DNA of 63,984 bases, counting the filler, from Octopus bimaculoides (lineage: Eukaryota), in NCBI RefSeq assembly GCF_001194135.2. It is 8 parts of 6 records of this genome, joined end to end, with 100 filler letters (N's around TTAATTAATTAA, not from the genome) between each part and the next. Parts side by side here need not be neighbours in the genome. Positions count along the whole stretch, not along the records: positions 5,061 to 27,702 come from NC_069005.1; 7 more parts are not named here. One strand, given 5' to 3'. Shown here in pieces: positions 4,471 to 25,563 of this stretch; within the stretch, counting starts at the first letter, position 1; the number at the start of each line of letters is the position of its first letter. The notes below the pieces were generated by a model that did not search any database, had not been told where the DNA came from, and saw only the letters and a program-made list of their open reading frames with translations. The position numbers were made by a program, and so were the translations under genes.

Positions 4471-4769
4471 AATCAGTACTATACATTATTTCTGTATTAT
4501 TATAAATTCATTATTTTGATCCCATGAAATTGCACGACTAACAATCATTTTGTAATTGCATGACGACTTGCTGCTACGTCGTAATGGCATTTCAGTCACG
4601 GTTTACAGGCGATGCATCAGCTATTGGGAGCAGCACATGCTTTTATGTTGAAATAAATTGGCATTTTTTATTATTACTTTCTATGAACATGACGTAAATT
4701 CACCGAACTCGAGCTTTAACTGGACATACAAACAGTATGAATACGTACATACATACATATATATATATA

Positions 4770-4960
4770 CTCTTTTACTTCTTTCAGTCATTTGATTTCG
4801 GTCATGCTGGAGCACCGCCTTTAGTCGAGCATCGACCCCAGGACTTATTCTCTGGAAGCCTAGTACTTATTCTATCGGTCTCTTTTACCGAACCGCTAGG
4901 TTACCGAGACGTAAACACACCACCATCAGTTGTCAAGCGATGTTGGGGGGACAAACACAG
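4770..4960 (-). mobile_element. SINE family A, 3' half, truncated by a gap
   Basis: Reverse complement of the tail seen at 9575-9770 and 47270-47460. Confidence 0.8.
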
Positions 4961-5060
4961 NNNNNNNNNNNNNNNNNNNNNNNNNNNNNNNNNNNNNNNN
5001 NNNNTTAATTAATTAANNNNNNNNNNNNNNNNNNNNNNNNNNNNNNNNNNNNNNNNNNNN
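4961..5060. other. Assembly gap marker 44N-TTAATTAATTAA-44N (12-mers also at 27747, 47078, 49743, 52718, 56511 and 62248)
   Basis: Identical 100-bp construct repeated in the window. The 12-mer has stop codons in all six frames, so it is artificial. Confidence 0.95.
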
Positions 5061-6071
5061 TATATATATATATATATACATACATACATATACATATATA
5101 TACATATACATGCATATATATATATATACATACATACATACATACACATATATACATACATATATGTATATACATATATATATATACACATACATATACA
5201 TATTTACATATATATATATATACATATATATATATACATACATATACATATATACATATATATATATGCATATATATATACACATTACACATACATATAT
5301 ATATATATATATACATTATATATATATATATATATATACACACACAAATATATATATATTTTAGTTTTTGTGGGATTGAACTAGTTTGGGCGTTCTTGAT
5401 TTAAGGTAGTTTTTATTTTATATACCGCATCATATATGGTCCTTCATTTGGATTCAAATTCTACTCAGGGTTATATTTGTTTAGGTGTTACTAGTTTATG
5501 AAAGTTTCCCTATATATATATATATATATAGATAGATAGATATATATATGCACACATGCTTATACAATATATACATATAAAAATATATATACAGTATTAG
5601 ATACATATATGATTTTAAGTATATAATATTTATTGTATACTTTACATTTTATATAGGCATATATAAGTCTATCGATCGATCGATAGAGAGAGAGATTGGT
5701 ATATTAGTATATAAAACCATGAAAATGTGCGTGTATGTACTATATATACATATTTACTTTAGAAGTGTGTATGCATATATATATATTTATTTAATATAAT
5801 ATACAAATTTATTTATTTTTGCATTTGTATATAATGTGTGGTGTATGTGTGAGAGTGTAATGATATATAACTATAAATATATATATATATATANNNNNNN
5901 NNNNNNNNNNNNNNNNNNNNNNNNNNNNNNNNNNNNNNNNNNNNNNNNNNNNNNNNNNNNNNNNNNNNNNNNNTCATAATGTACTTATCGTAACTATTCA
6001 TAATTTAAAACCTCTAAGGAATATTAACCATTAGATGTTACATATAAACAAATGCACGCACACACATACAT

Positions 6072-8351: not shown

Positions 8352-8580
8352 ACATGGCTGTGTGGTAAGAAGTTTGCTTCCTAACCACACGGTTCCGGGT
8401 TCAGTTCCTCTGCGTAGCACCTTGAGCAAGTGTCTTCTACTATAGCCTTGCACCAACAAAAACCTTGTGAGTGGATTCAGTAGGCAAAAACTGGGGGAAA
8501 AAGCCAGATTTTAAAAAAATAAGTACTGAGGTCAATTCATTCCATGGCCGCAGTCTAATGACTAAAACAAGTAAAAGATA
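8352..8580 (+). mobile_element. SINE family A, internally deleted
   Basis: Head ATGGCTGTGTGGTAAGAAG...GGTTCAGTTCC and tail GACTAAAACAAGTAAAAGA. Confidence 0.75.
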
Positions 8581-9205: not shown

Positions 9206-9574
9206 TGTAAATACAATCCTCTGTGCTTGATGCGGACCGTTAAGCCATTTGTAGACCTTAACAGCTTCTCAGTTAATTAATAATGCACTACAAAGCGACT
9301 AATAAATATGAAAAGTACACTACGAGGCGACTATTGGTCAAAAAAATTAGTACTATCCTGACTAGTTCTTCTCTCTTTAGAGAACAAGAGCCTTTTCTTC
9401 TTCCAAAGGAAAGGTTGATAAGGTTGATACCTCATAACTATTTATACTATACACAAACCAGGATTGATCTGTTCCTGTCGTATATATGTATATATATATA
9501 TATATATNNNNNNNNNNNNNNNNNNNNNNNNNNNNNNNNNNNNNNNNNNNNNNNNNNNNNNNNNNNNNNNNNNN

Positions 9575-11024: not shown

Positions 11025-11658
11025 GATCTGTTCAGTTTGGCGCACAGATTTTTTAATAAATTTTTTTTTAACTAAACAGTTTGAAACTTCGTATACTGGT
11101 GGAATGTCTCACGCAGAACATGGTTTACTTTGAACATTTTTGACAAAATTTGTTATTTTAGAAGTTATTTCGTGTTAAAGTTGTCGTATTTGGGTAAATT
11201 CAACCAATCAACGACGTGTATTCAGTTGAAGAAAGCTACTGCTGTTTGCGAAAGTAATCGAAGCGAAACTACTTCCGGGTCTTCTCTACTAAAAGTCACC
11301 ACTCTGTTCTATTCGCATGTCGAGTGAAGGCGATGCCACCTTTATCCTTTCTTGTCAGCACCGTGCATTCCTTACTCTTTCTCTCCCGACCTTTAGTAGA
11401 GATGACCTGGAAGTTGTTCCTCTTCGATTACTATTGCAAACAGCAGTAGCTTCCTTCAACTGAATACACGTCATTAATTGGTTGAAATTAGCCAAATTCG
11501 ATAACTTTAACACGAAATAGCTTCTAAAATAACAAATTTTGTCAAAAATGTTCAAAGTAAACCATGTTCTGCGTGAGGCATTCCACCAGTATACGAAGTT
11601 TCAAGCTGTTTCGTTAAAAACATTAATTAAAAATTCTGTGAGCCAAATTGAGCAGATC
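11025..11658. mobile_element. Foldback element with inverted arms of about 270 bp and a spacer of about 90 bp, inserted into a family B SINE
   Basis: 11025-~11296 is the reverse complement of ~11388-11658. The flanks join into the family B motif GGTACTTAT..CATCGAC.CCGAAAGGATGAAAGG. Confidence 0.85.
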
Positions 11659-11757: not shown

Positions 11758-11826
<69 letters not shown>

Positions 11827-11829
<3 letters not shown>

Positions 11830-12383
11830 GCCCGGATGCAGTACCAGGCAGTGGTTCTCATGGCTTCTGATCTTAATTGATTGGAAGTGTTATCATGTAC
11901 AATGTTTTGTCTTGGTATAAAAGATGGGCTACAACAAATATTCTGCTCAATACCACAGATTTGCTTGTTAGTTGTTTGACCATATCCAGCTGAGCATGTC
12001 CTTTAGTGGCTGTCGATATGTGCATCTCTGATCATGAGCAGAAGTAGTGGGGATGCATCAAAGCCATGTGTTGCAAGGAATTCTTTGGCGGTTGAATAAT
12101 TCACCTTTGGAAACATGGGTGTTTTGCTCAACACACTTAAACAAACCTTATTCAGGGACTTTTTGAGCGGGATGGGCTATTCGACCTGGAGAAAATTCTA
12201 ACTGGGCCCCACCTGCGAGGTCATGCGCTGTTTATTTTGGTATGAGATCACCATGTAGCACACATATGGTTGTGATGCATGTGCCTGGTGTACTCTTATC
12301 AGACGGGTAGTCATGATGGGTATAATGGGCTTCGTATATTTTACCACAGTGTCACTTTGATGGCATGCACTGCTCTCTCACTC

Positions 12384-12420
<37 letters not shown>

Positions 12421-12582
12421 GCGCTGTTTATCTTGATATAAGGTCACCATGTCGCGCACATATGGTTATGGTGCATGTGCCTGGTGTACCCTTATCAGAT
12501 GGGTAGTTATAATGAGTGTACTGGGCTTCGTATATCTGTACCCCAGTGTTACTTCGATGGCATGCATTGCTCTCTCACTCAG
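11827..12582. repeat. About 560-bp interspersed element between (AAT)n tracts, plus a tandem partial duplicate (12421-12582) of its last about 165 bp
   Basis: 12223-12385 resembles 12421-12582. (AAT)n lies at 11760-11826 and 12385-12421. Confidence 0.7.
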
Positions 12583-14900
12583 TGATGATGATGATGATGA
12601 TGATGATGATGACGACGATGACGATTTCTTTTCATTGGCCACAAAGGCCCAAGATATGGAGGCATTGTCAAAGGACTAAAGCCAACACACGAAATAGACG
12701 AGCTTGTCACGGCTGGAACTAGAGTTCTGCCTGGCTAAGACTGACCAAAAGCTAAACAACAGCCACAACTTACTGCTCATAAACTTTAGTTAAATTTACC
12801 TTTTACAGATATTGATTTTTTTCACCTCCTCCGTTTACAGTGTTTAATCTGCATCTGGGTATCGATTACTGCCGAAGTATTGATTTCTAACGTGAAAACA
12901 AGGCTACATGTTTTCCCACGTGAGGAAGGAACCGTTTAAAACCCAGCACTTGACTACTACTTTAGTTTATTGGTATCTCAGTAAGGATTTAAAGTGTTGT
13001 TACTCTCACCAGTATTTGAACTCAGAACGTTAAAAAAGCCAGAGCTACATTTCACAATACATGTTGATTTTTTTACATTATCACCATGATTCAAATTTAA
13101 CGTAATATAGTCGATTTGATTTCTAATGTAATTATGTGTCTGTGTTCATATCTGTATTTACATAGCATTACAATATTATAGATTGAGTTTACTAAAATAA
13201 TACCAAACTTTAAAACAAAAGCAACCAAAGTCGAGCTGATTAAAAAAACTCTCAATTAAACTATTTCCCCAGAATAACTAAAAACCATTGCTAGAGAACG
13301 GGTAAAGAAAAAAAAATTAAAATATGACAAGGGAGAGAACTCTATCTTTTTACTTTGTTTTCTCCCTTGCAAAGTATAACTTTGTTAGTTCAAATGGTTT
13401 ATAATTTATTTATGGTTTTCAGCCAAGTGACTGCGGTCATGTACTTTTCTTTGAGAATGTTCCGAATTAGTTCATAGTTTGTAGTCTTTTACTGGTGATT
13501 TCTTCCTCGTTATTTTTCCACCAGAACATCAGAAGCACTTTGGATGAATCATTATCATTAGAAATAGGATATGTGAATTGAATGAAATTAATGCTCCTTC
13601 CCCAATTTTCAGGAATTTCGGGAGAGGAGATAAGTTGATTATATGGACGTCAGTGTTCAACTGATTCTTATTTTATCGACCCCGAAAGGATGAAAGCGAA
13701 GTTGACCTTGGCAATCATTTAATAGCATTAACAATGAAACAAAACTGGAACGAAAAATGTCGCAAAATAATTTATTTCCTTAAATCAGTTCTTTACCTGA
13801 CTAGACTGTTCTCAATCTTTTTTTTACTTGNNNNNNNNNNNNNNNNNNNNNNNNNNNNNNNNNNNNNNNNNNNNNNNNNNNNNNNNNNNNNNNNNNNNNN
13901 NNNNNNNNNNNNNNNNNNNNNNNNNNNNNNNNNNNNNNNNNNNNNNNNNNNNNNNNNNNNNNNNNNNNNNNNNNNNNNNNNNNNNNNNNNNNNNNNNNNN
14001 NNNNNNNNNNNNNNNNNNNNNNNNNNNNNNNNNNNNNNNNNNNNNNNNNNNNNNNNNNNNNNNNNNNNNNNNNNNNNNNNNNNNNNNNNNNNNNNNNNNN
14101 NNNNNNNNNNNNNNNNNNNNNNNNNNNNNNNNNNNNNNNNNNNNNNNNNNNNNNNNNNNNNNNNNNNNNNNNNNNNNNNNNNNNNNNNNNNNNNNNNNNN
14201 NNNNNNNNNNNNNNNNNNNNNNNNNNNNNNNNNNNNNNNNNNNNNNNNNNNNNNNNNNNNNNNNNNNNNNNNNNNNNNNNNNNNNNNNNNNNNNNNNNNN
14301 NNNNNNNNNNNNNNNNNNNNNNNNNNNNNNNNNNNNNNNNNNNNNNNNNNNNNNNNNNNNNNNNNNNNNNNNNNNNNNNNNNNNNNNNNNNNNNNNNNNN
14401 NNNNNNNNNNNNNNNNNNNNNNNNNNNNNNNNNNNNNNNNNNNNNNNNNNNNNNNNNNNNNNNNNNNNNNNNNNNNNNNNNNNNNNNNNNNNNNNNNNNN
14501 NNNNNNNNNNNNNNNNNNNNNNNNNNNNNNNNNNNNNNNNNNNNNNNNNNNNNNNNNNNNNNNNNNNNNNNNNNNNNNNNNNNNNNNNNNNNNNNNNNNN
14601 NNNNNNNNNNNNNNNNNNNNNNNNNNNNNNNNNNNNNNNNNNNNNNNNNNNNNNNNNNNNNNNNNNNNNNNNNNNNNNNNNNNNNNNNNNGAGGTAGAGT
14701 TGGAAAATGTGTTGAAAGTTGCTAATGAATGTATGGAGACGTAAATAACAGGAAAATGAGAAAATTACATTTATCACTCACCAAATATTATACAGGTTTG
14801 TTTATTTTTAATATGTACAATATATTGTAGTCAATGATTCCCTTGAAAATCTACCAATATATATTAACGACAGAGGTAGTGTTAATACCTTGAGGTAATA

Positions 14901-16462
14901 TTGGGTCATCCCGTAAATAATCCGATTTTTTTAGACTTCTTTTATTTTTCAAAATTAAGATAAACAATTTCTACAATGCTCTTTCATCTATCTGGTAGAC
15001 TTGCAAGGTCCCTCTTCCAAAATTCACTTGTCCATGGCGAAAAATACCCCTCCAGTAATGTTCTGACCTCGTCTACAGAGTTCATATTTTTTCCGTCCAA
15101 ATGATTTTGAAGACTGCAGAATGTCCGGCGAATATGGTGGGTGGGTGGGGACATCGTTGCCCATTCAAACTGCTCCAGCCTTTCGAATGTCATCCTCGCT
15201 GCTATATGTGGCTGAGCATTATCCTGATGGAAGAACATCTTTCGACTTGAAACCAAAGATGGTCGTTTTTCTTCTAACGCAGGTGTTGATGAATGGTTGA
15301 CTGACCAAGCTTCTCTGTTAATTAATATTTATTGGACAAAACAGAGAACACAATTGAAAAAATTAAAAACAAAAACAAAAAAAAAGAGAGAGAAGGGATT
15401 AAAAAAAACAAAAAACAATTCACCAAAAAGTTGGGGGCGCTGGGAAACGACTCTAATGGCTATTGAGACACGCCAGCACGCTTGCAGCGTTGCCGCGGGT
15501 GATGGCGAGGCATGCGCTGGAACAGCCAAATGCCCTCACGAACCTCACGAGTTACCTCTGTAAGGCGAGTTGCTAGTGAAGATAGGAATCTCGCAGTTAG
15601 TGGTCCGACTCCACCAAACGTCTCGAACGCCACAGGATGGGAAATGTTGTTGGCCGACAGATCATGATATTTCAGGATTTTGTTCCACTCGGCCACAGAA
15701 TTTGTGGATCTCGCCCTGACCGTAGCATCCAGGATGTGAGAAGAAACAAAGGAGTCGCTAACTGTGAGATCCCAGACAAGGCATCTGCCTTGCGACCAGG
15801 GGCACAAGATGAGGCGGTCAGGTCTCTTCCCATCACATCTGGACAAAGCAGATGGTTCCAAGATGGCGGGGATGTTTGCCTGGACCAAGTTCCTCTTGAG
15901 TATCAGGTTCAATTCTGTATGACGCACGATGCGACCAGCATTCAGTCGGCAAGAAAGGCCATGGAGGCCTGTGGAATCGAGGAGCCTGCTGCAACGACAG
16001 ATCAAACCCGTGTAAACGTCAGCTCCCACTCTGAGGACAATGGAGACACAGGATTGCAGGACGTCCTCATCGAGCTCTACGGATCTTCCAGGATGAGGCG
16101 CATCTTCTAGGCTGTAGTTTCGGCTCGGAATTTCTGGAACCACCGTTGACACTGGCTTACCTTTATTGTCCGATCCCCATATACTGCAGTAATATTCCTC
16201 ACACTTTCCGTTGCGTTGTTGCCTTTATTGAATTCATAAAGCAAAATATGTCGAATATGCTCCTTTGTCACTTCCATTATAGCTTTGAAAAAAACCAATT
16301 GTTAAAATCAAACTGCACACTTCAAAATTTTCACTAAGATTAAATACGAGGTAAAATTACTACCTGTTTTTACAGCAAGTTGATGCAGGTAGTTCATCCT
16401 GTCCCCCTCTGACTTTTAGTTTATGTAATTGAAAAAACCGCATTATTCATGGGATGACCCAA
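14901..16462 (-). mobile_element. Mariner (DD34D-type) element with intact ends and an internally replaced transposase
   Basis: TIRs TTGGGTCATCCCGTAAATAATCCG / CCGCATTATTCATGGGATGACCCAA, both flanked by TA. N-terminal HTH MEVTKEHIRHILLYEFNKGNNATE (ATG 16277). C-terminal remnant EEKRPSLVSSRKMFFHQDNAQPH (about 15277-14984). Confidence 0.9.
15453..16050 (-). pseudogene. CRE-like non-LTR retrotransposon C-terminal fragment: CCHC zinc knuckle plus restriction-like endonuclease
   Basis: Motifs CRC...GLHGLSC, RHTELN, LEP..L.R.DGKRPD, PWSQG..LVWD.TV.D, K..KY, P.AFETFG and FQR / LAITRGNAASVLACL (frameshift near 15510). Confidence 0.85.
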
Positions 16463-16483
16463 TAATTATGCCCACTTAAACAT

Positions 16484-16779: not shown

Positions 16780-18130
16780 AATTATGCTTTTCATCGATAA
16801 AATAAAATACCAGCCAAGTACCAATCGGTATAATTGACCTGCTCCTTGTCACTAAAATCGTTGGCCTTGTGCCAAAATTTGAAACTATAATTACTTCCCC
16901 TTCTAAGGCGGCGAGCTGGCAGAATCGTTAGCACACCGGACAAAATGCATAGCGACATTTCGTTCGTCTTTATGTTATAGGTTCACATGTCGCTGAGGTC
17001 GACTTTGACTTTCATACTTTCGGAATCAATAAAATAAGGACCAGTTGAGCACTGGGGGTCGATATAATCGACTAGCCCGCTCTCCAAAATTTCAGTGCCT
17101 AGAATACAAAGTATAATTACTTCCCTTCCTATAAGGTTAGTAGCTGGCAATATCGTTATCGCGTCGGACAAAATGCTTAGCGACATTTCTTCCGACTCTG
17201 TACATTCTAAGTTCAAATTCTGTGGAGATTAACTTTACATTTCATCATTTCAGGGTTAAACCCCTTCCTCTAAAATTGTTGGGCCATGTGCCTCGCTTTG
17301 CAACCACATGATTTCAAATTCAGGTTCCACTGCGTGTCACCTTGGGCCAGTGTTTTCTACTACAGCATCAGGCCGACCAATACCTTGCACTTGAAATTGG
17401 TTGACAGAAACTTTGTGGAAGCCCTGCCATATTTCGTTGAATGCACCGGTTCTCGTCCGATCACCGTAGTTGAGCAACTTCGAGCCTAATTAGTACTTAG
17501 ATGGGTGACCGTTTGGGAAACTAGGTGCTGTAAACATCTCACTTCTAAGTGCAGGAGTTGTAGTGTGGTAAGAAGTTTGCTTCCCGACCATATGGTTCCG
17601 AGTTCAATCCCACTGCATGGCAACTCAACCAAGTGTCTTCTACAATTGCCTAAGGGTTAGGGTTAGGGTTGTGAGTGGATTTGGTAGACGGAAACTGAAA
17701 GCAGCCCATCGCGTGCGTGTGTGTTTGCACTTGCACGCCATTTGACAACTGGTGTTGGTTTGTTTACGTCCCCGTAACTTAGCAGTCATGCATAAAAGAG
17801 ACAGACTAAGCACCAGACTTCAAATTAAATAGCGAGGGTGATTTGTTTGACTAAACACGTCAAGGCGATGCCCCAGCAAGGCGAAGTCCATTAAACAAGT
17901 AAAAGATAAAGACTCATTTGTTTATTATTTACAAGCCTAAAGGCAGCCGCCTGGCAGAATCGTTAACCTGCTGGACGAAATACTTAACGACATTTCGTCT
18001 GCCTTTATGTTCTGGGTTCAAATTCTGCCAAAGTCGACTTTGCTTTCATCCTTTCGTGGTCGATAAAATAAGTACCACTTGCGCACTGGGATTGACATTT
18101 CCTTCAAATTGCTGGTCCTGTGCCAAAATT
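16780..18130. mobile_element. Cluster of SINEs: family B at about 16780-16880 (-), 16905-17110, 17140-17260 and 17940-18130 (+); family A pieces at 17285-17430 and 17550-17910 (+)
   Basis: Recurring family A and B motifs. Confidence 0.7.
17651..17670 (+). repeat. Short interstitial telomeric repeat TAAGGGTTAGGGTTAGGGTT inside a family A SINE
   Basis: It replaces TCGGGCCGACCAAAGCCTT, which other family A copies (e.g. 47147-47166) carry at this position. Confidence 0.65.
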
Positions 18131-19224
18131 TTGAAATCATAATTCACAGGTTTTGTTACAGGAAGAAGTGTGACAACCAGGGATCCCTTTCATTTACGCA
18201 GATCTTTCGGGTGGCTGAGAGAATGAGGTTATCGCCAGACTCATCACTACGTCTAACCCTTCCACCCCAAAGCATCATCCCACTGGAATTCCGCCCTGCT
18301 CATATCTTTCCCATAGCTGTTGACTNNNNNNNNNNNNNNNNNNNNNNNNNNNNNNNNNNNNNNNNNNNNNNNNNNNNNNNNNNNNNNNNNNNNNNNNNNN
18401 NNNNNNNNNNNNNNNNNNNNNNNNNNNNNNNNNNNNNNNNNNNNNNNNNNNNNNNNNNNNNNNNNNNNNNNNNNNNNNNNNNNNNNNNNNNNNNNNNNNN
18501 NNNNNNNNNNNNNNNNNNNNNNNNNNNNNNNNNNNNNNNNNNNNNNNNNNNNNNNNNNNNNNNNNNNNNNNNNNNNNNNNNNNNNNNNNNNNNNNNNNNN
18601 NNNNNNNNNNNNNNNNNNNNNNNNNNNNNNNNNNNNNNNNNNNNNNNNNNNNNNNNNNNNNNNNNNNNNNNNNNNNNNNNNNNNNNNNNNNNNNNNNNNN
18701 NNNNNNNNNNNNNNNNNNNNNNNNNNNNNNNNNNNNNNNNNNNNNNNNNNNNNNNNNNNNNNNNNNNNNNNNNNNNNNNNNNNNNNNNNNNNNNNNNNNN
18801 NNNNNNNNNNNNNNNNNNNNNNNNNNNNNNNNNNNNNNNNNNNNNNNNNNNNNNNNNNNNNNNNNNNNNNNNNNNNNNNNNNNNNNNNNNNNNNNNNNNN
18901 NNNNNNNNNNNNNNNNNNNNNNNNNNNNNNNNNNNNNNNNNNNNNNNNNNNNNNNNNNNNNNNNNNNNNNNNNNNNNNNNNNNNNNNNNNNNNNNNNNNN
19001 NNNNNNNNNNNNNNNNNNNNNNNNNNNNNNNNNNNNNNNNNNNNNNNNNNNNNNNNNNNNNNNNNNNNNNNNNNNNNNNNNNNNNNNNNNNNNNNNNNNN
19101 NNNNNNNNNNNNNNNNNNNNNNNNNNNNNNNNNNNNNNNNNNNNNNNNNNNNNNNNNNNNNNNNNNNNNNNNNNNNNNNNNNNNNNNNNNNNNNNNNNNN
19201 NNNNNNNNNNNNNNNNNNNNNNNN

Positions 19225-20369: not shown

Positions 20370-20880
20370 CATCCTTCTTCTTCTTCTTCTTCTTCTTCTT
20401 CTTCTTCTTCTTCTCCTCCTCCTCCTCCTCCTCCTTCCTCTTCTTCTTCTCCTCCTCCTCCTCCTCCTCCTCCTTCTTCTTCTTCTCCTCCTCCTCCTCC
20501 TCCTTCTTCTTCTTCTTCTTCTTCTTCTTCTTCTTCTTCTTCTTCTTCTTCTTCTTCTTCTTCTTCTTCTTTCCGGTAATAGCTGAATAGTTGTCTGTTA
20601 TTGTTCTTAGTCTACCTCTTGGTCTCCTCCCAGTAAGTTCGGCTAGAAGAATCCATCTTCTGATTCTTTCCTGTGACATTCTAATCTCACATGTCCATAG
20701 TACCAGAGCTGTTATCTCTCAATGCAGAGAAATAATTGATCGAACCGAAGAGGTGCCCTGATCTCCGAGCTGCGCACCTTGACCAGTAACTTTATTCTTG
20801 AGATCTTTCAGAGGAACCCCTTTTCGGTCACGTGTATTTGCGATTGTACTCTTTCGGCCATTGCCCAACATTAGGCACGA
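20370..20880 (-). mobile_element. 5'-truncated RTE-clade LINE 3' end with an (AAG/GAG)n tail
   Basis: Degenerate translation QIHVTEKGFL*KISRIKLLVKVRSSEIR...IER*QLWYYGHV..RMSQERIRRWILLAELTGRRPRGRLRT, followed by the trinucleotide tract at 20370-20570. Confidence 0.8.
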
Positions 20881-22238
20881 ATTGAAGATAGCAAGTTTTT
20901 TTGGTTTGTTTTTTAACCGCTTCTTTTCTGAGGAACGAATGCTGGATTTGGCGCATTATTGTATTCGCGCTAAATATAATTTTTGGATTTTAGCTTTTTA
21001 AAATGTACTCAAAACGGAATCATTATTTTGCTTGTTTTCCCTGTCTAGTCTTGTTAACTCTCTTTGCTTCCAGTGAAATTGTTACAATTTATTACTAAGA
21101 CGTCTAGAATATAGATGCCTCTTATCTTATTTTTGAAAATTAGTACTAAGTACTAATCTACTGTATCTATAATATTCCTGGTTAATCTTTTCCTTCATTT
21201 TTATGGTTTTTAATCTGTCTGGTTCATTATTTGCTAAGTATCTGTGTGTCTATGATTCGCCTGATTCTCTTATCATTTTTTCGTTCTATAACATACACCA
21301 ATAAGTACGAACATGGTTGTGTGGTTAAGACATTTGCTTCCCAATCACGTGGTTTTCAGTTCAGTCCCGTTACTTGGCATCTCGGGCAAGAATAATCTAC
21401 TATAGCCCCCGGGCCGACCAAAGCCTTGTATGAAGGAAACTCAAAGAAGCTCGTCGTTTATATACATACCATACATATGTAGCTGGTAGGTGTTGTTACC
21501 ACTTGTATTTGAGCTGATTGGATGACTGCTGGGTGTTGTATATGACTGCTGATGTTGGGAACTGACTGTTGGCTGGTATTTCTAGCGTCAGAGTTCAACA
21601 GTTGTACATAGAAGAAAATGACGAAATCCGTTGAGATGTTTACGAACAAACTTTATCTCTTATTGAGATAGTTCGGATGCTATTGTTCTTGATGTAATTG
21701 AAATAGTATTCTAAAAGTTACTGCTAGTCGTTGTGTTTCTGTGGATAATTCATTATACTAGCAAATCTACCCATCTACAATGGCGGCATAAAATGAGGGA
21801 GGAAGTGATATGCATTGAGAAATGTGTAAATGGACTTGATAGATTACTGGGTGATGTCTTAGAGAAATCACATTATTGTTGGTGGTACAGCTATATGACA
21901 TGTGTTTGCGATTAAGTGATATGTGATAACGATTCACTTCTGAAATACCAGCCTCTGTATCATGAATGGTTATGTGGACCACTCCTAACGAAAGCCAGAG
22001 CTTCCTTCGACCACTACATAAAAAGTATTAAGAAAAAAAATGTTATTTAGATATACTTTTATTTTAGTTGTTTACACTATTTTACGCTTGTTTATACTCT
22101 TATACATTCAAAGTTCACAAATTTCCTTATTTAATTATGAATCATATTCTTTTCGATAATATCTATATGTTAAATTGAAATTACGACAAACGTAAATAAA
22201 CAAACGAAGTTTGCTTTTAGAAGCGTTGAGATGTCTTT

Positions 22239-22592
22239 TAGAAGGTTAAAGAAGTGATTTTAAATTCTCAATCGCAGAATAATGCTAATAATATAACCTG
22301 AACAGGATAAACTACCCCTATTTTACAGAGAAAAGTGTAGGTGGCTAGCTGTGGACCCGAACTCACATCCCCGTCATTACATGTGACGATGCTTTGACCG
22401 ATTAAGCTAAACTACCCACTACAAATTCCTCTGCAAATTAAGATATATAAATCTCGCTTTATGAGACGCTCTCATATGTTAGCTCGCCACCTACACTTTT
22501 CTCTGCAAAATGGAGGTAGTTTATTCTGTTCAGGCTATATTATTAGCATTATTCTGCGATTGAGAATTTAAAATCACTTCTTTAACTTTCTA
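22239..22592. repeat. 112-bp inverted arms (22239-22350 and 22481-22592) enclosing a tRNA-like sequence
   Basis: The arms match as reverse complements, and both outer ends are TA. Confidence 0.85.
22344..22416 (-). pseudogene. tRNA-like cloverleaf (anticodon loop CATGTAA, nominal TGT/Thr); probably a pseudo-tRNA or SINE head
   Basis: Acceptor GGTAGTT/AGCTAGC (one mismatch), D stem GCTT/AAGC, anticodon stem CGTCA/TGACG, and T arm GTGAG-TTCGGGT-CCAC (defective). U33 is absent. Confidence 0.55.
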
Positions 22593-22608
22593 ATATCAAT
22601 ATGATTAC

Positions 22609-25341: not shown

Positions 25342-25563
25342 NNNNNNNNNNNNNNNNNNNNNNNNNNNNNNNNNNNNNNNNNNNNNNNNNNNNNNNNNNN
25401 NNNNNNNNNNNNNNNNNNNNNNNNNNNNNNNNNNNNNNNNNNNNNNNNNNNNNNNNNNNNNNNNNNNNNNNNNNNNNNNNNNNNNNNNNNNNNNNNNNNN
25501 NNNNNNNNNNNNNNNNNNNNNNNNNNNNNNNNNNNNNNNNNNNNNNNNNNNNNNNNNNNNNNN

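What the first reader, a model, noticed from the sequence alone, without database searches (positions are those of the whole stretch)
14901..16462. Mariner with intact ends whose catalytic core is replaced by a retrotransposon zinc-knuckle/restriction-like endonuclease: near in-frame HTH-nuclease chimera
Seen: matching TIRs and TA TSDs bound 1562 bp. The mariner reading (ATG 16277) gives HTH1 (52 aa). After a single missing base at about 16121, it continues NYSLEDAPHPGRSVELDEDVLQS and runs in frame at about 16050 into about 180 stop-free codons of a CRE-type CCHC plus PD-(D/E)xK endonuclease, with RPD, WD and KxxKY retained. Mariner sequence resumes at about 15277 (EEKRPSLV..HQDNA), so HTH2 and the first catalytic Asp region are deleted rather than merely interrupted. 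Known: mariner HTH1 binds TIRs and dimerises, and RLE domains nick DNA. Inference: this is either an insertion with target deletion or capture during gap repair. The unit could be mobilised in trans as a cargo-carrying mariner and may once have encoded a TIR-targeted nuclease fusion.
Basis: partly seen in the sequence, partly recalled or inferred. Interest (0 to 1): 0.75.

Follow-up and report, generated by a model that had tools for sequence, protein, structure and literature searches.

The report
Dead mariner with nested retrotransposon fragment
This is a decayed mariner DNA transposon that was later hit by a 5'-truncated copy of an R2-like (restriction-like-endonuclease) LINE retrotransposon, which is an ordinary nested transposon insertion in an octopus-type genome and not a functional HTH-nuclease fusion.

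Summary
There are 33-nt TIRs with TA duplications bounding 1562 bp, a mariner HTH1 (Pfam HTH_48, E=8e-24), a 1-base deletion at 16121, and an in-frame run into a 196-codon ORF with CCHC, RH, RPD, WDxT and KxxKY motifs. That ORF is the C-terminal zinc-knuckle plus restriction-like endonuclease (RLE) of a non-LTR retrotransposon. Its relatives carry RT upstream and no APE, its model matches only R2 proteins strongly, and its profile hits R2Bm. "CRE-type" is not shown.

Three other mariner copies run uninterrupted through the insertion point, so the 735-bp fragment (16050-15316) replaced only about 42 bp. The HTH2 recognition helix survives right after it (15315-15277). A separate internal deletion at 15277/15276 removed Mos1-equivalent residues 109-228, including the first catalytic Asp.

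The fragment loses similarity to an independent O. vulgaris copy about 15 bp before its own end. That copy extends 5' into RT. This fits a 5'-truncated target-primed insertion. Both reading frames are broken. None of about 18 family copies that read through the site, and none of 3 close retroelement copies, shares the junction. Verdict: dead nested insertion, low interest.

The parts
16463..16464 (.). TA target-site duplication, 5' side of the element (element reads on the minus strand)
   Evidence: Sequence. It lies next to the TIR arm found.
16432..16462 (-). Mariner 5' terminal inverted repeat (TTGGGTCATCCCATGAATAATGCGG...)
   Evidence: 33-nt arms including TA, 88% complementary; homologous to the TIRs of three other copies.
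16278..16431 (-). Mariner 5' untranslated region
   Evidence: colinear with copies L002, L003 and L004. The whole 5' part is 91.5% identical to their majority consensus.
16107..16277 (-). Mariner transposase N-terminus (ATG 16277), HTH1. A 1-nt deletion at 16121/16120 shifts the frame and gives a stop at 16107.
   Evidence: HTH_48 E=7.8e-24. Mos1 residues 7-82 and SETMAR 6-83; the other copies have the extra G.
16051..16120 (-). Mariner linker NYSLEDAPHPGRSVELDEDVLQS (frame after the 1-nt deletion). This is the last mariner sequence before the insert.
   Evidence: The family consensus is NYSLEDEPRPGRSVELDEDVLQTLVEQNP...
15316..16050 (-). Inserted 5'-truncated fragment (735 bp) of an RLE-type non-LTR retrotransposon, made of the C-terminal ORF remnant plus the 3' UTR. 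Boundaries are good to about 3 bp at the 5' end. The last 15 bp (15330-15316, AT-rich) cannot be assigned with certainty.
   Evidence: 80.6% nt identity to O. vulgaris L001:6124-6813, with no mariner there; three other copies continue 5' as retroelement. L001 carries RT upstream. GC 50-54% against 28-37% in the flanks.
15949..15999 (-). CCHC zinc knuckle (CRCSRLLDSTGLHGLSC; C-x-C-x9-H-x3-C)
   Evidence: C18, C20, H30 and C34 are invariant in 32 sequences; aligned to the R2Bm knuckle at residues 931-950.
15619..15924 (-). Restriction-like endonuclease core: RH (15924-15919), E-P, RPD (15825-15817), WDLT (15774-15763), KILKY (15681-15667), FET (15627-15619)
   Evidence: One search gives the conservation. 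AlphaFold model with pLDDT 80, and the top 7 PDB matches are all R2 proteins (E 1.5e-6 to 2e-3); the profile hits R2Bm residues 931-996 at E=5.9e-4.
15511..15512 (-). Site of a 2-nt deletion in the retro ORF. It shifts the frame and loses the conserved SLAIxRGNAAS tail. The natural stop would be at 15455-15453, and the shifted ORF stops at 15462-15460.
15316..15452 (-). Retroelement 3' UTR. It is T-rich, has AATAAA at 15333-15328 and has no poly(A) tail. Similarity to the O. vulgaris copy ends at 15331.
15277..15315 (-). Mariner HTH2 remnant (EKLG..QSTIHQHLR, the recognition helix; Mos1-equivalent residues 94-108)
   Evidence: aligns to L003:4301-4347 and L002:3260-3312. Searches show the family sequence. 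P0269 residues 89-103 align to Mos1 94-108.
15276..15277 (-). Breakpoint of a separate internal mariner deletion. Mos1-equivalent residues 109-228 are missing (about 360 bp), including the first catalytic Asp.
   Evidence: homology to the other copies stops at exactly 15277. Searches give the Mos1 numbering.
14932..15276 (-). Decayed mariner C-terminal remnant and 3' UTR: ALEEKRPSLV..FFHQDNAQPH (second Asp, 15229-15215) and YSPD (15134-15123). The third-Asp region is disrupted, with several frameshifts and stops.
   Evidence: SETMAR catalytic domain E=5e-5; Mos1 220-284. No Pfam hit.
14901..14931 (-). Mariner 3' terminal inverted repeat
14899..14900 (.). TA target-site duplication, 3' side

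Best explanation
The locus is a dead, non-autonomous mariner copy carrying a nested insertion. It has no function.

Proposed history (the order of steps 2-4 is not resolved):
1. A mariner inserted at a TA site. This is shown by the TIRs and the TA duplication.
2. An RLE-type (R2-like architecture) non-LTR retrotransposon inserted into its HTH2-coding region by target-primed reverse transcription. This step is inferred. The element's RNA was reverse-transcribed from its natural 3' end at a nick near mariner position 15316/15315. Synthesis or joining stopped 17 codons before the CCHC knuckle, giving the 5' truncation. The 5' end was joined about 42 bp upstream, so 14 HTH2 codons (LVEQNPxxTVEELA) were lost.
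3. A separate internal deletion removed the linker and the first-Asp part of the catalytic domain. Mariner derivatives typically acquire such deletions by abortive gap repair.
4. Small indels then broke both reading frames: 1 nt at 16121 and 2 nt at 15512.

The in-frame continuity of the mariner linker with the RLE ORF is coincidence.
For: - Empty-site comparison. Three other family copies (O. sinensis L003, JGI L002 and L004) are colinear with the window from the TIR to 16051. They continue with 42 bp that the window lacks, then with the sequence found at 15315-15277.
- About 18 of the family ORFs retrieved read from DEDVLQ into TLVEQNP..., directly or frameshifted. None reads into the retro ORF.
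- The insert is 80.6% identical to an independent O. vulgaris copy that has no mariner flanks and extends 5' through RT.
- Three other copies continue 5' of the junction as retroelement. The window copy is therefore 5'-truncated.
- Similarity to the O. vulgaris copy ends at 15331 in the 3' UTR, about 15 bp before mariner resumes. The flanks are unrelated after that point, so the 3' end looks natural.
- Domain identity. Relatives have RVT_1 upstream, PHD/RFX N-termini and no APE. The best PDB fold matches are R2 proteins only. The family profile hits the R2Bm knuckle and KPD region.
- Decay. The frameshifts are seen. Substitutions against the paralogue are spread 25/20/31 over the three codon positions, and dN/dS is 0.43-0.73.
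- No family ORF exceeds 126 aa.
- GC is 50-54% in the insert and 28-37% in the flanks.
Against: - Two metagenome scans found nothing.
- The natural 3' end rests on one other copy only.
- There is no poly(A) or other defined tail, and the last 15 bp of the insert cannot be assigned.
- There is no target-site duplication. That is compatible with TPRT with a target deletion, but also with endonuclease-independent insertion at a break.
- The 196-codon ORF has no stop despite its apparent age. This is mildly unexpected under pure neutral decay (by my rough estimate, on the order of a one-in-ten chance).
Confidence: 0.8

Rival explanations
1. Filler-DNA capture. After mariner excision, gap repair copied the element back from a sister or homologue. 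Synthesis then switched template onto a nearby retroelement copy or its cDNA, and the 735-bp piece was sealed in by end joining.
For: The same element has a separate internal deletion of the kind made by abortive gap repair. About 42 bp of target are lost and there is no duplication. A 2-5 nt microhomology (CC/TG) is possible at the 5' junction.
Against: The captured piece ends where the only other available copy also ends, in the 3' UTR after AATAAA, and it is truncated only at its 5' side. That polarity is what TPRT predicts, and it would be a coincidence for random template switching. The insert and the deletion breakpoint are 39 bp apart, so they are two lesions, not one.
Confidence: 0.1
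2. The composite is, or was, a mobilisable cargo-carrying mariner amplified in trans, and it may have encoded an HTH1-RLE fusion nuclease aimed at mariner TIRs.
For: The TIRs and TA duplication are intact. HTH1 and all RLE catalytic motifs are retained. One restored base would make a continuous frame.
Against: - Both ORFs are frameshifted, and the conserved RLE C-terminal motif is lost.
- A nearly invariant Gly after RPD is Arg in this copy.
- 0 of about 18 mariner copies and 0 of 3 close retro copies share the junction.
- The junction-spanning ORF is absent from a 15-billion-protein collection by exact look-up.
- No intact transposase of the family was seen that could mobilise it.
- Being in frame has a one-in-three prior.
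- From general knowledge of R2, the RLE works within the full RT-linker-RLE protein, so an isolated knuckle plus RLE is unlikely to be an efficient nuclease.
Confidence: 0.04
3. Assembly artefact. Two repeats were joined wrongly in a gap-rich draft assembly.
For: The piece holds several N gaps, one only about 210 bp from the element (13831-14690). Both components are repeats.
Against: There are no Ns inside the element. Mariner sequence resumes in the same orientation and the correct order after the insert, with matching TIRs and TA on both sides. A collapse or chimera would not produce that.
Confidence: 0.03

Closest known systems
Mariner family of Tc1/mariner DNA transposons (Mos1, Hsmar1/SETMAR transposase domain), as internally deleted non-autonomous copies
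   Same: TA duplication, TIRs of about 30 bp and a paired-like HTH1 (HTH_48). The HTH2 recognition helix, the KRP..HxDNAxPH motif and the YSPD motif are recognisable. Sequence matches Mos1 and SETMAR structures.
   Different: The first catalytic Asp region is absent, the third Asp region is disrupted, and there are multiple frameshifts. The element carries a foreign 735-bp insert. Its deletion differs from that of the sibling copies of about 570 bp, which keep only HTH1 and HTH2.
R2 and other restriction-like-endonuclease (RLE) non-LTR retrotransposons (clades R2, R4/Dong, CRE, NeSL/Utopia, HERO)
   Same: A C-terminal CCHC knuckle is followed by a PD-(D/E)xK nuclease with RH, (K/R)PD, D and K motifs. 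In relatives RT lies upstream in the same protein, the N-terminus is a DNA-binding region and there is no APE. The fold and the profile match R2 proteins. 5' truncation with a variable 5' junction is typical (PMC4640811).
   Different: Only the last 196 codons plus the 3' UTR are present here. Knuckle spacing is C-x-C-x9-H-x3-C. Full-length relatives carry PHD and RFX domains at the N-terminus. The two copies seen have unrelated flanks, so no site specificity is evident. The clade is unresolved. Dong-R4, Hero, R2 and CRE are all reported in cephalopods (PMC13282606, PMC10294476).
Nested transposon insertions with target-site deletion (5'-truncated LINE inside a DNA transposon)
   Same: One element interrupts another. 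An uninterrupted ('empty') site is seen in sibling copies. The insert has an intact 3' end and a truncated 5' end, and a short target deletion replaces a duplication.
   Different: Nothing of substance. The only unusual point is that the junction happens to be in frame.
SETMAR-type domesticated mariner fusions
   Same: A mariner DNA-binding domain is joined in frame to an unrelated enzymatic domain.
   Different: There is no intact ORF, no evidence of conservation, expression or selection, and the partner is a retroelement fragment inside the transposon's own TIRs.

Membership tests
Mariner (Tc1/mariner superfamily) | TA target-site duplication flanking the element | tested here: met
   TA at 14899-14900 and 16463-16464.
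Mariner (Tc1/mariner superfamily) | Terminal inverted repeats of about 30 bp | tested here: met
   33-nt arms, 88% complementary. They are homologous to the TIRs of L002-L004.
Mariner (Tc1/mariner superfamily) | N-terminal bipartite HTH DNA-binding domain | tested here: met
   HTH_48 E=7.8e-24. The HTH2 recognition helix is retained at 15315-15277, but the first 14 HTH2 codons are replaced by the insert.
Mariner (Tc1/mariner superfamily) | Intact DD34D catalytic domain (autonomous element) | tested here: not met
   Mos1-equivalent residues 109-228, which include D156, are absent. The second Asp motif HQDNA is present. The third Asp region is disrupted and there are frameshifts. The copy is a non-autonomous remnant.
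RLE-type non-LTR retrotransposons (R2-like architecture) | CCHC zinc knuckle followed by a PD-(D/E)xK nuclease with RH, (K/R)PD, D and K motifs | tested here: met
   The motifs are invariant in the 32-sequence alignment and present in the window copy. The profile matches R2Bm residues 931-996 at E=5.9e-4.
RLE-type non-LTR retrotransposons (R2-like architecture) | Nuclease fold like the R2 RLE | tested here: met
   The model has pLDDT 80.3 and pTM 0.75. Foldseek ranks 1-7 are all R2 proteins (E 1.5e-6 to 2.1e-3), followed by other PD-(D/E)xK nucleases. TM-scores are modest, about 0.4.
RLE-type non-LTR retrotransposons (R2-like architecture) | Domain lies C-terminal to a reverse transcriptase, with no APE endonuclease | tested here: met
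   RVT_1 lies upstream in 13 of the 15 relatives scanned, and none has Exo_endo_phos. The O. vulgaris copy L001 has RT at about 4590-5820 upstream of the RLE.
RLE-type non-LTR retrotransposons (R2-like architecture) | This copy is a complete element (RT present) | tested here: not met
   Only residues equivalent to about 884-1096 of 1092-1110-aa relatives are present. The copy is 5'-truncated at 16050.
The nearest solved RT to full-length relatives is R2.
   The window copy sits in a mariner HTH2 region and the O. vulgaris copy has an unrelated flank. With n=2 this looks non-specific, as described for HERO.
Domesticated transposase fusion gene (SETMAR-like) | Intact ORF across the fusion | tested here: not met
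   There is a 1-nt deletion at 16121 and a 2-nt deletion at 15512. The mariner C-terminus is heavily decayed.
Domesticated transposase fusion gene (SETMAR-like) | Expression and conservation at orthologous loci | not testable with these tools
No orthologous locus was retrievable.

The most novel reading that the evidence does not exclude
The composite (mariner ends plus the RLE fragment) was mobilised in trans by a once-active mariner transposase. It would then exist as a small family of TA-flanked copies sharing both junctions in the source genome. That would be a natural example of a mariner carrying retroelement-derived cargo, possibly after a short period in which it encoded an HTH1-knuckle-RLE protein.
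Probability: 0.05. Interest if true: 0.45.

Novelty: already known. Interest (0 to 1): 0.1.

Why it matters
It matters little beyond annotation. The locus is a clean worked example of a 5'-truncated RLE-type LINE insertion with a 42-bp target deletion inside a defective mariner. It shows how an accidental in-frame junction can look like a designed fusion. It would become interesting only if genome-wide counting showed that the composite had been amplified. The widespread RLE-LINE lineage with PHD/RFX N-termini, to which the fragment belongs, may merit proper clade assignment in cephalopod repeat libraries.

Tried and rejected
There is therefore no read depth, frameshift verification or RNA evidence.
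- The search for related loci with the junction-spanning ORF and the DNA search with a 21-mer next to the junction found nothing in metagenome contigs. The bacterial genome and viral collections are irrelevant here.
- Exact look-ups of the junction ORF and the HTH1 ORF found nothing on record.
- Pfam gave no hit for the RLE ORF or for the mariner C-terminus.
- The HMMER alignment of GQSTIHQHLR to Mos1 220-229 was rejected as a spurious extension once sibling copies showed that this stretch is HTH2.
- tblastn alignments running a few codons into the mariner linker (to 16074-16128) were rejected as in-frame chance similarity. At the nucleotide level that DNA matches mariner copies.
- Literature searches for PHD-bearing RLE clades gave nothing usable, so the clade stays unassigned.
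- Logan copies L005-L007 do not reach the 3' end. The 3' terminus therefore rests on L001 alone.

Full report
**Observation**

On the minus strand, window 14901-16462 is bounded by 33-nt inverted arms that are 88% complementary (14899-14931 and 16432-16464). Each arm includes a flanking TA. From ATG 16277 the sequence encodes a mariner HTH1. Pfam HTH_48 scores E=7.8e-24, and the best PDB sequence matches are the Mos1 transposase and the SETMAR DNA-binding domain.

Three other copies of the same family were fetched through their short ORFs: O. sinensis L003 and two JGI contigs, L002 and L004. After that shift the frame reads NYSLEDAPHPGRSVELDEDVLQS. At 16050 it continues without a stop for 196 codons.

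**What the inserted ORF is**

Pfam has no model for it, but it has many relatives. A profile search found 16,810 cluster representatives at E<=1e-3. In longer relatives the domain is C-terminal. RVT_1 lies 250-400 residues upstream, the N-terminus carries PHD and RFX DNA-binding domains, and there is no APE nuclease.

A 32-sequence alignment shows these invariant or nearly invariant motifs:
- C-x-C-x9-H-x3-C
- RH..N
- E-P
- (K)RPD(G)
- WDxT
- K..KY
- ET
- QR...RGNAA

The window copy keeps all of them up to QR.

An AlphaFold model (pLDDT 80.3, pTM 0.75) was searched against the PDB. Ranks 1-7 are all R2 retrotransposon proteins (E 1.5e-6 to 2.1e-3), followed by weaker matches to other PD-(D/E)xK nucleases. 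The family profile also hits the R2Bm knuckle, RHN, ELEP and KPD stretch (residues 931-996) at E=5.9e-4.

'CRE-type' is not shown. Dong-R4, Hero, R2 and CRE are all reported in cephalopods (PMC13282606, PMC10294476). The two copies seen here have unrelated flanks, which fits a non-specific lineage such as HERO (PMC4640811) better than a strictly site-specific one.

**Anatomy of the junctions**

- The three sibling mariner copies are colinear with the window from the TIR down to 16051. They then continue with 42 bp encoding LVEQNPxxTVEELA. After that comes GAGAAGCTTGG...CACCTGCGT, which is the sequence found in the window at 15315-15277.
- That stretch is the HTH2 recognition helix (AEKLGFGHSTIHRHLR; Mos1 residues 94-108). 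The foreign fragment occupies 16050-15316 (735 bp) and replaced only about 42 bp of target. HTH2 is interrupted, not removed.
- Homology to the sibling copies stops at exactly 15277. The window then jumps to ALEEKRPSLV..FFHQDNAQPH, at about Mos1 residue 229.
- This is a second, independent internal deletion of about 120 codons. It took out the first catalytic Asp. It lies 39 bp from the insert.
- The sibling copies carry a different deletion, from WVPH straight to the 3' TIR, which gives elements of about 570 bp.
- The mariner C-terminal remnant is riddled with frameshifts and has lost the third-Asp context.

**How the fragment got there**

The insert is 80.6% identical over 696 aligned bp to an O. 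vulgaris locus, L001:6124-6797. That locus has no mariner around it. It extends 5' through the linker and RT, to about L001:4590. Two further lineages of Logan contigs also continue 5' of the junction as retroelement. The window copy is therefore 5'-truncated, 17 codons before the first knuckle cysteine.

At the 3' side, similarity to L001 runs through the stop codon and a T-rich 3' UTR to ...GTTTTGTCCAAT (15331). The two loci then diverge. In the window, mariner sequence resumes 15 bp later.

The combination points to target-primed reverse transcription:
- an apparently natural 3' end
- a truncated 5' end
- a possible 2-5 nt microhomology at the 5' junction
- a short target deletion instead of a duplication

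Filler capture during gap repair is possible but would need the captured piece to end at the element's own terminus by coincidence. I give it about 0.1.

**Is it, or was it, functional or mobilised?**

- Both frames are broken. Besides the 1-nt deletion at 16121, the retro ORF has a 2-nt deletion at 15512/15511 relative to the O. vulgaris copy and to all homologues. This loses the conserved SLAIxRGNAAS tail.
- A nearly invariant Gly after RPD is Arg in this copy.
- Differences from the O. vulgaris paralogue fall 25/20/31 on the three codon positions, and dN/dS is 0.43-0.73. This fits mostly neutral decay added to some earlier constraint in the active lineage.
- Among 35 ORFs of this mariner family none exceeds 126 aa, so no source of transposase was seen.
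- About 18 of them read through DEDVLQ into mariner sequence, directly or as the frameshifted ANPGGTKS. None reads into the retro ORF.
- None of the three close retroelement copies has a mariner 5' flank.
- The junction-spanning ORF is absent from the protein collection by exact look-up.
- An in-frame junction has a one-in-three chance expectation.

**Limits**

These samples come from related genomes and metagenome-labelled contigs, not from the source genome.

**Verdict**

This is a real feature that was described accurately in most details but over-interpreted. It is a defective mariner with a nested, 5'-truncated RLE-LINE insertion and a separate internal deletion. This kind of locus is already well known. 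Interest is 0.1. The residual novel reading, a mobilised composite, has a probability of about 0.05.

Noticed in passing
L002:2819-3397, L003:3854-4419, L004:2794-3374 (related loci): Sibling mariner copies are deletion derivatives of about 570 bp. They keep an ORF of 118-119 aa encoding only HTH1 and HTH2 and ending WVPHI* (P0266, P0269, P0274). This is a DNA-binding-domain-only mariner derivative present in many copies. One O. sinensis copy is annotated 'SETMAR-like'.
   Followed up: partly
window 8360-8448, 17563-17651, 21320-21408: Three copies (82% and 67% identity to the first) of a repeat of about 89 nt with a tRNA-like B-box (GGTTCCGGGTTCAGTTCC). It is probably a SINE.
   Followed up: no
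window 16905-17007, 17142-17197, 17940-18042: Another dispersed repeat head (AGCTGGCAGAATCGTTAGC...) lies next to the mariner in three copies at 75-82% identity. It looks SINE-like.
   Followed up: no
window 11065-11297 / 11388-11620: A long inverted repeat with 233-nt arms, 92% complementary, and a 90-nt spacer. It has a foldback or hairpin-element appearance.
   Followed up: no
window 22238-22350 / 22481-22593: Inverted arms of 113 nt, 94% complementary, 130 nt apart. It looks MITE-like.
   Followed up: no
window 12225-12625: A tandem duplication of a unit of about 115 nt (87% identity). One copy is followed by (AAT)n and the other by (GAT)n, so the microsatellite motif changed between the duplicates. 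A perfect (TAA)23 lies at 11759-11827.
   Followed up: no
window 20374-20571: A long (CTT)n/(CTC)n array of 66 units. The piece also has several assembly gaps: 5894-5973, 9508-9574, 13831-14690, 18326-19224 and 25342-25563.
   Followed up: no
P0178, P0187, P0125 (full-length relatives of the inserted ORF): The RLE-LINE lineage to which the fragment belongs carries an N-terminal PHD finger and an RFX-type winged-helix DNA-binding domain. I could not find this N-terminal combination described for RLE clades in the searchable literature.
   Followed up: partly
window 15637-16110 (+ strand): A 157-aa ATG ORF runs antisense to the RLE ORF. It is most likely a by-product of the GC-rich coding sequence.
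   Followed up: no
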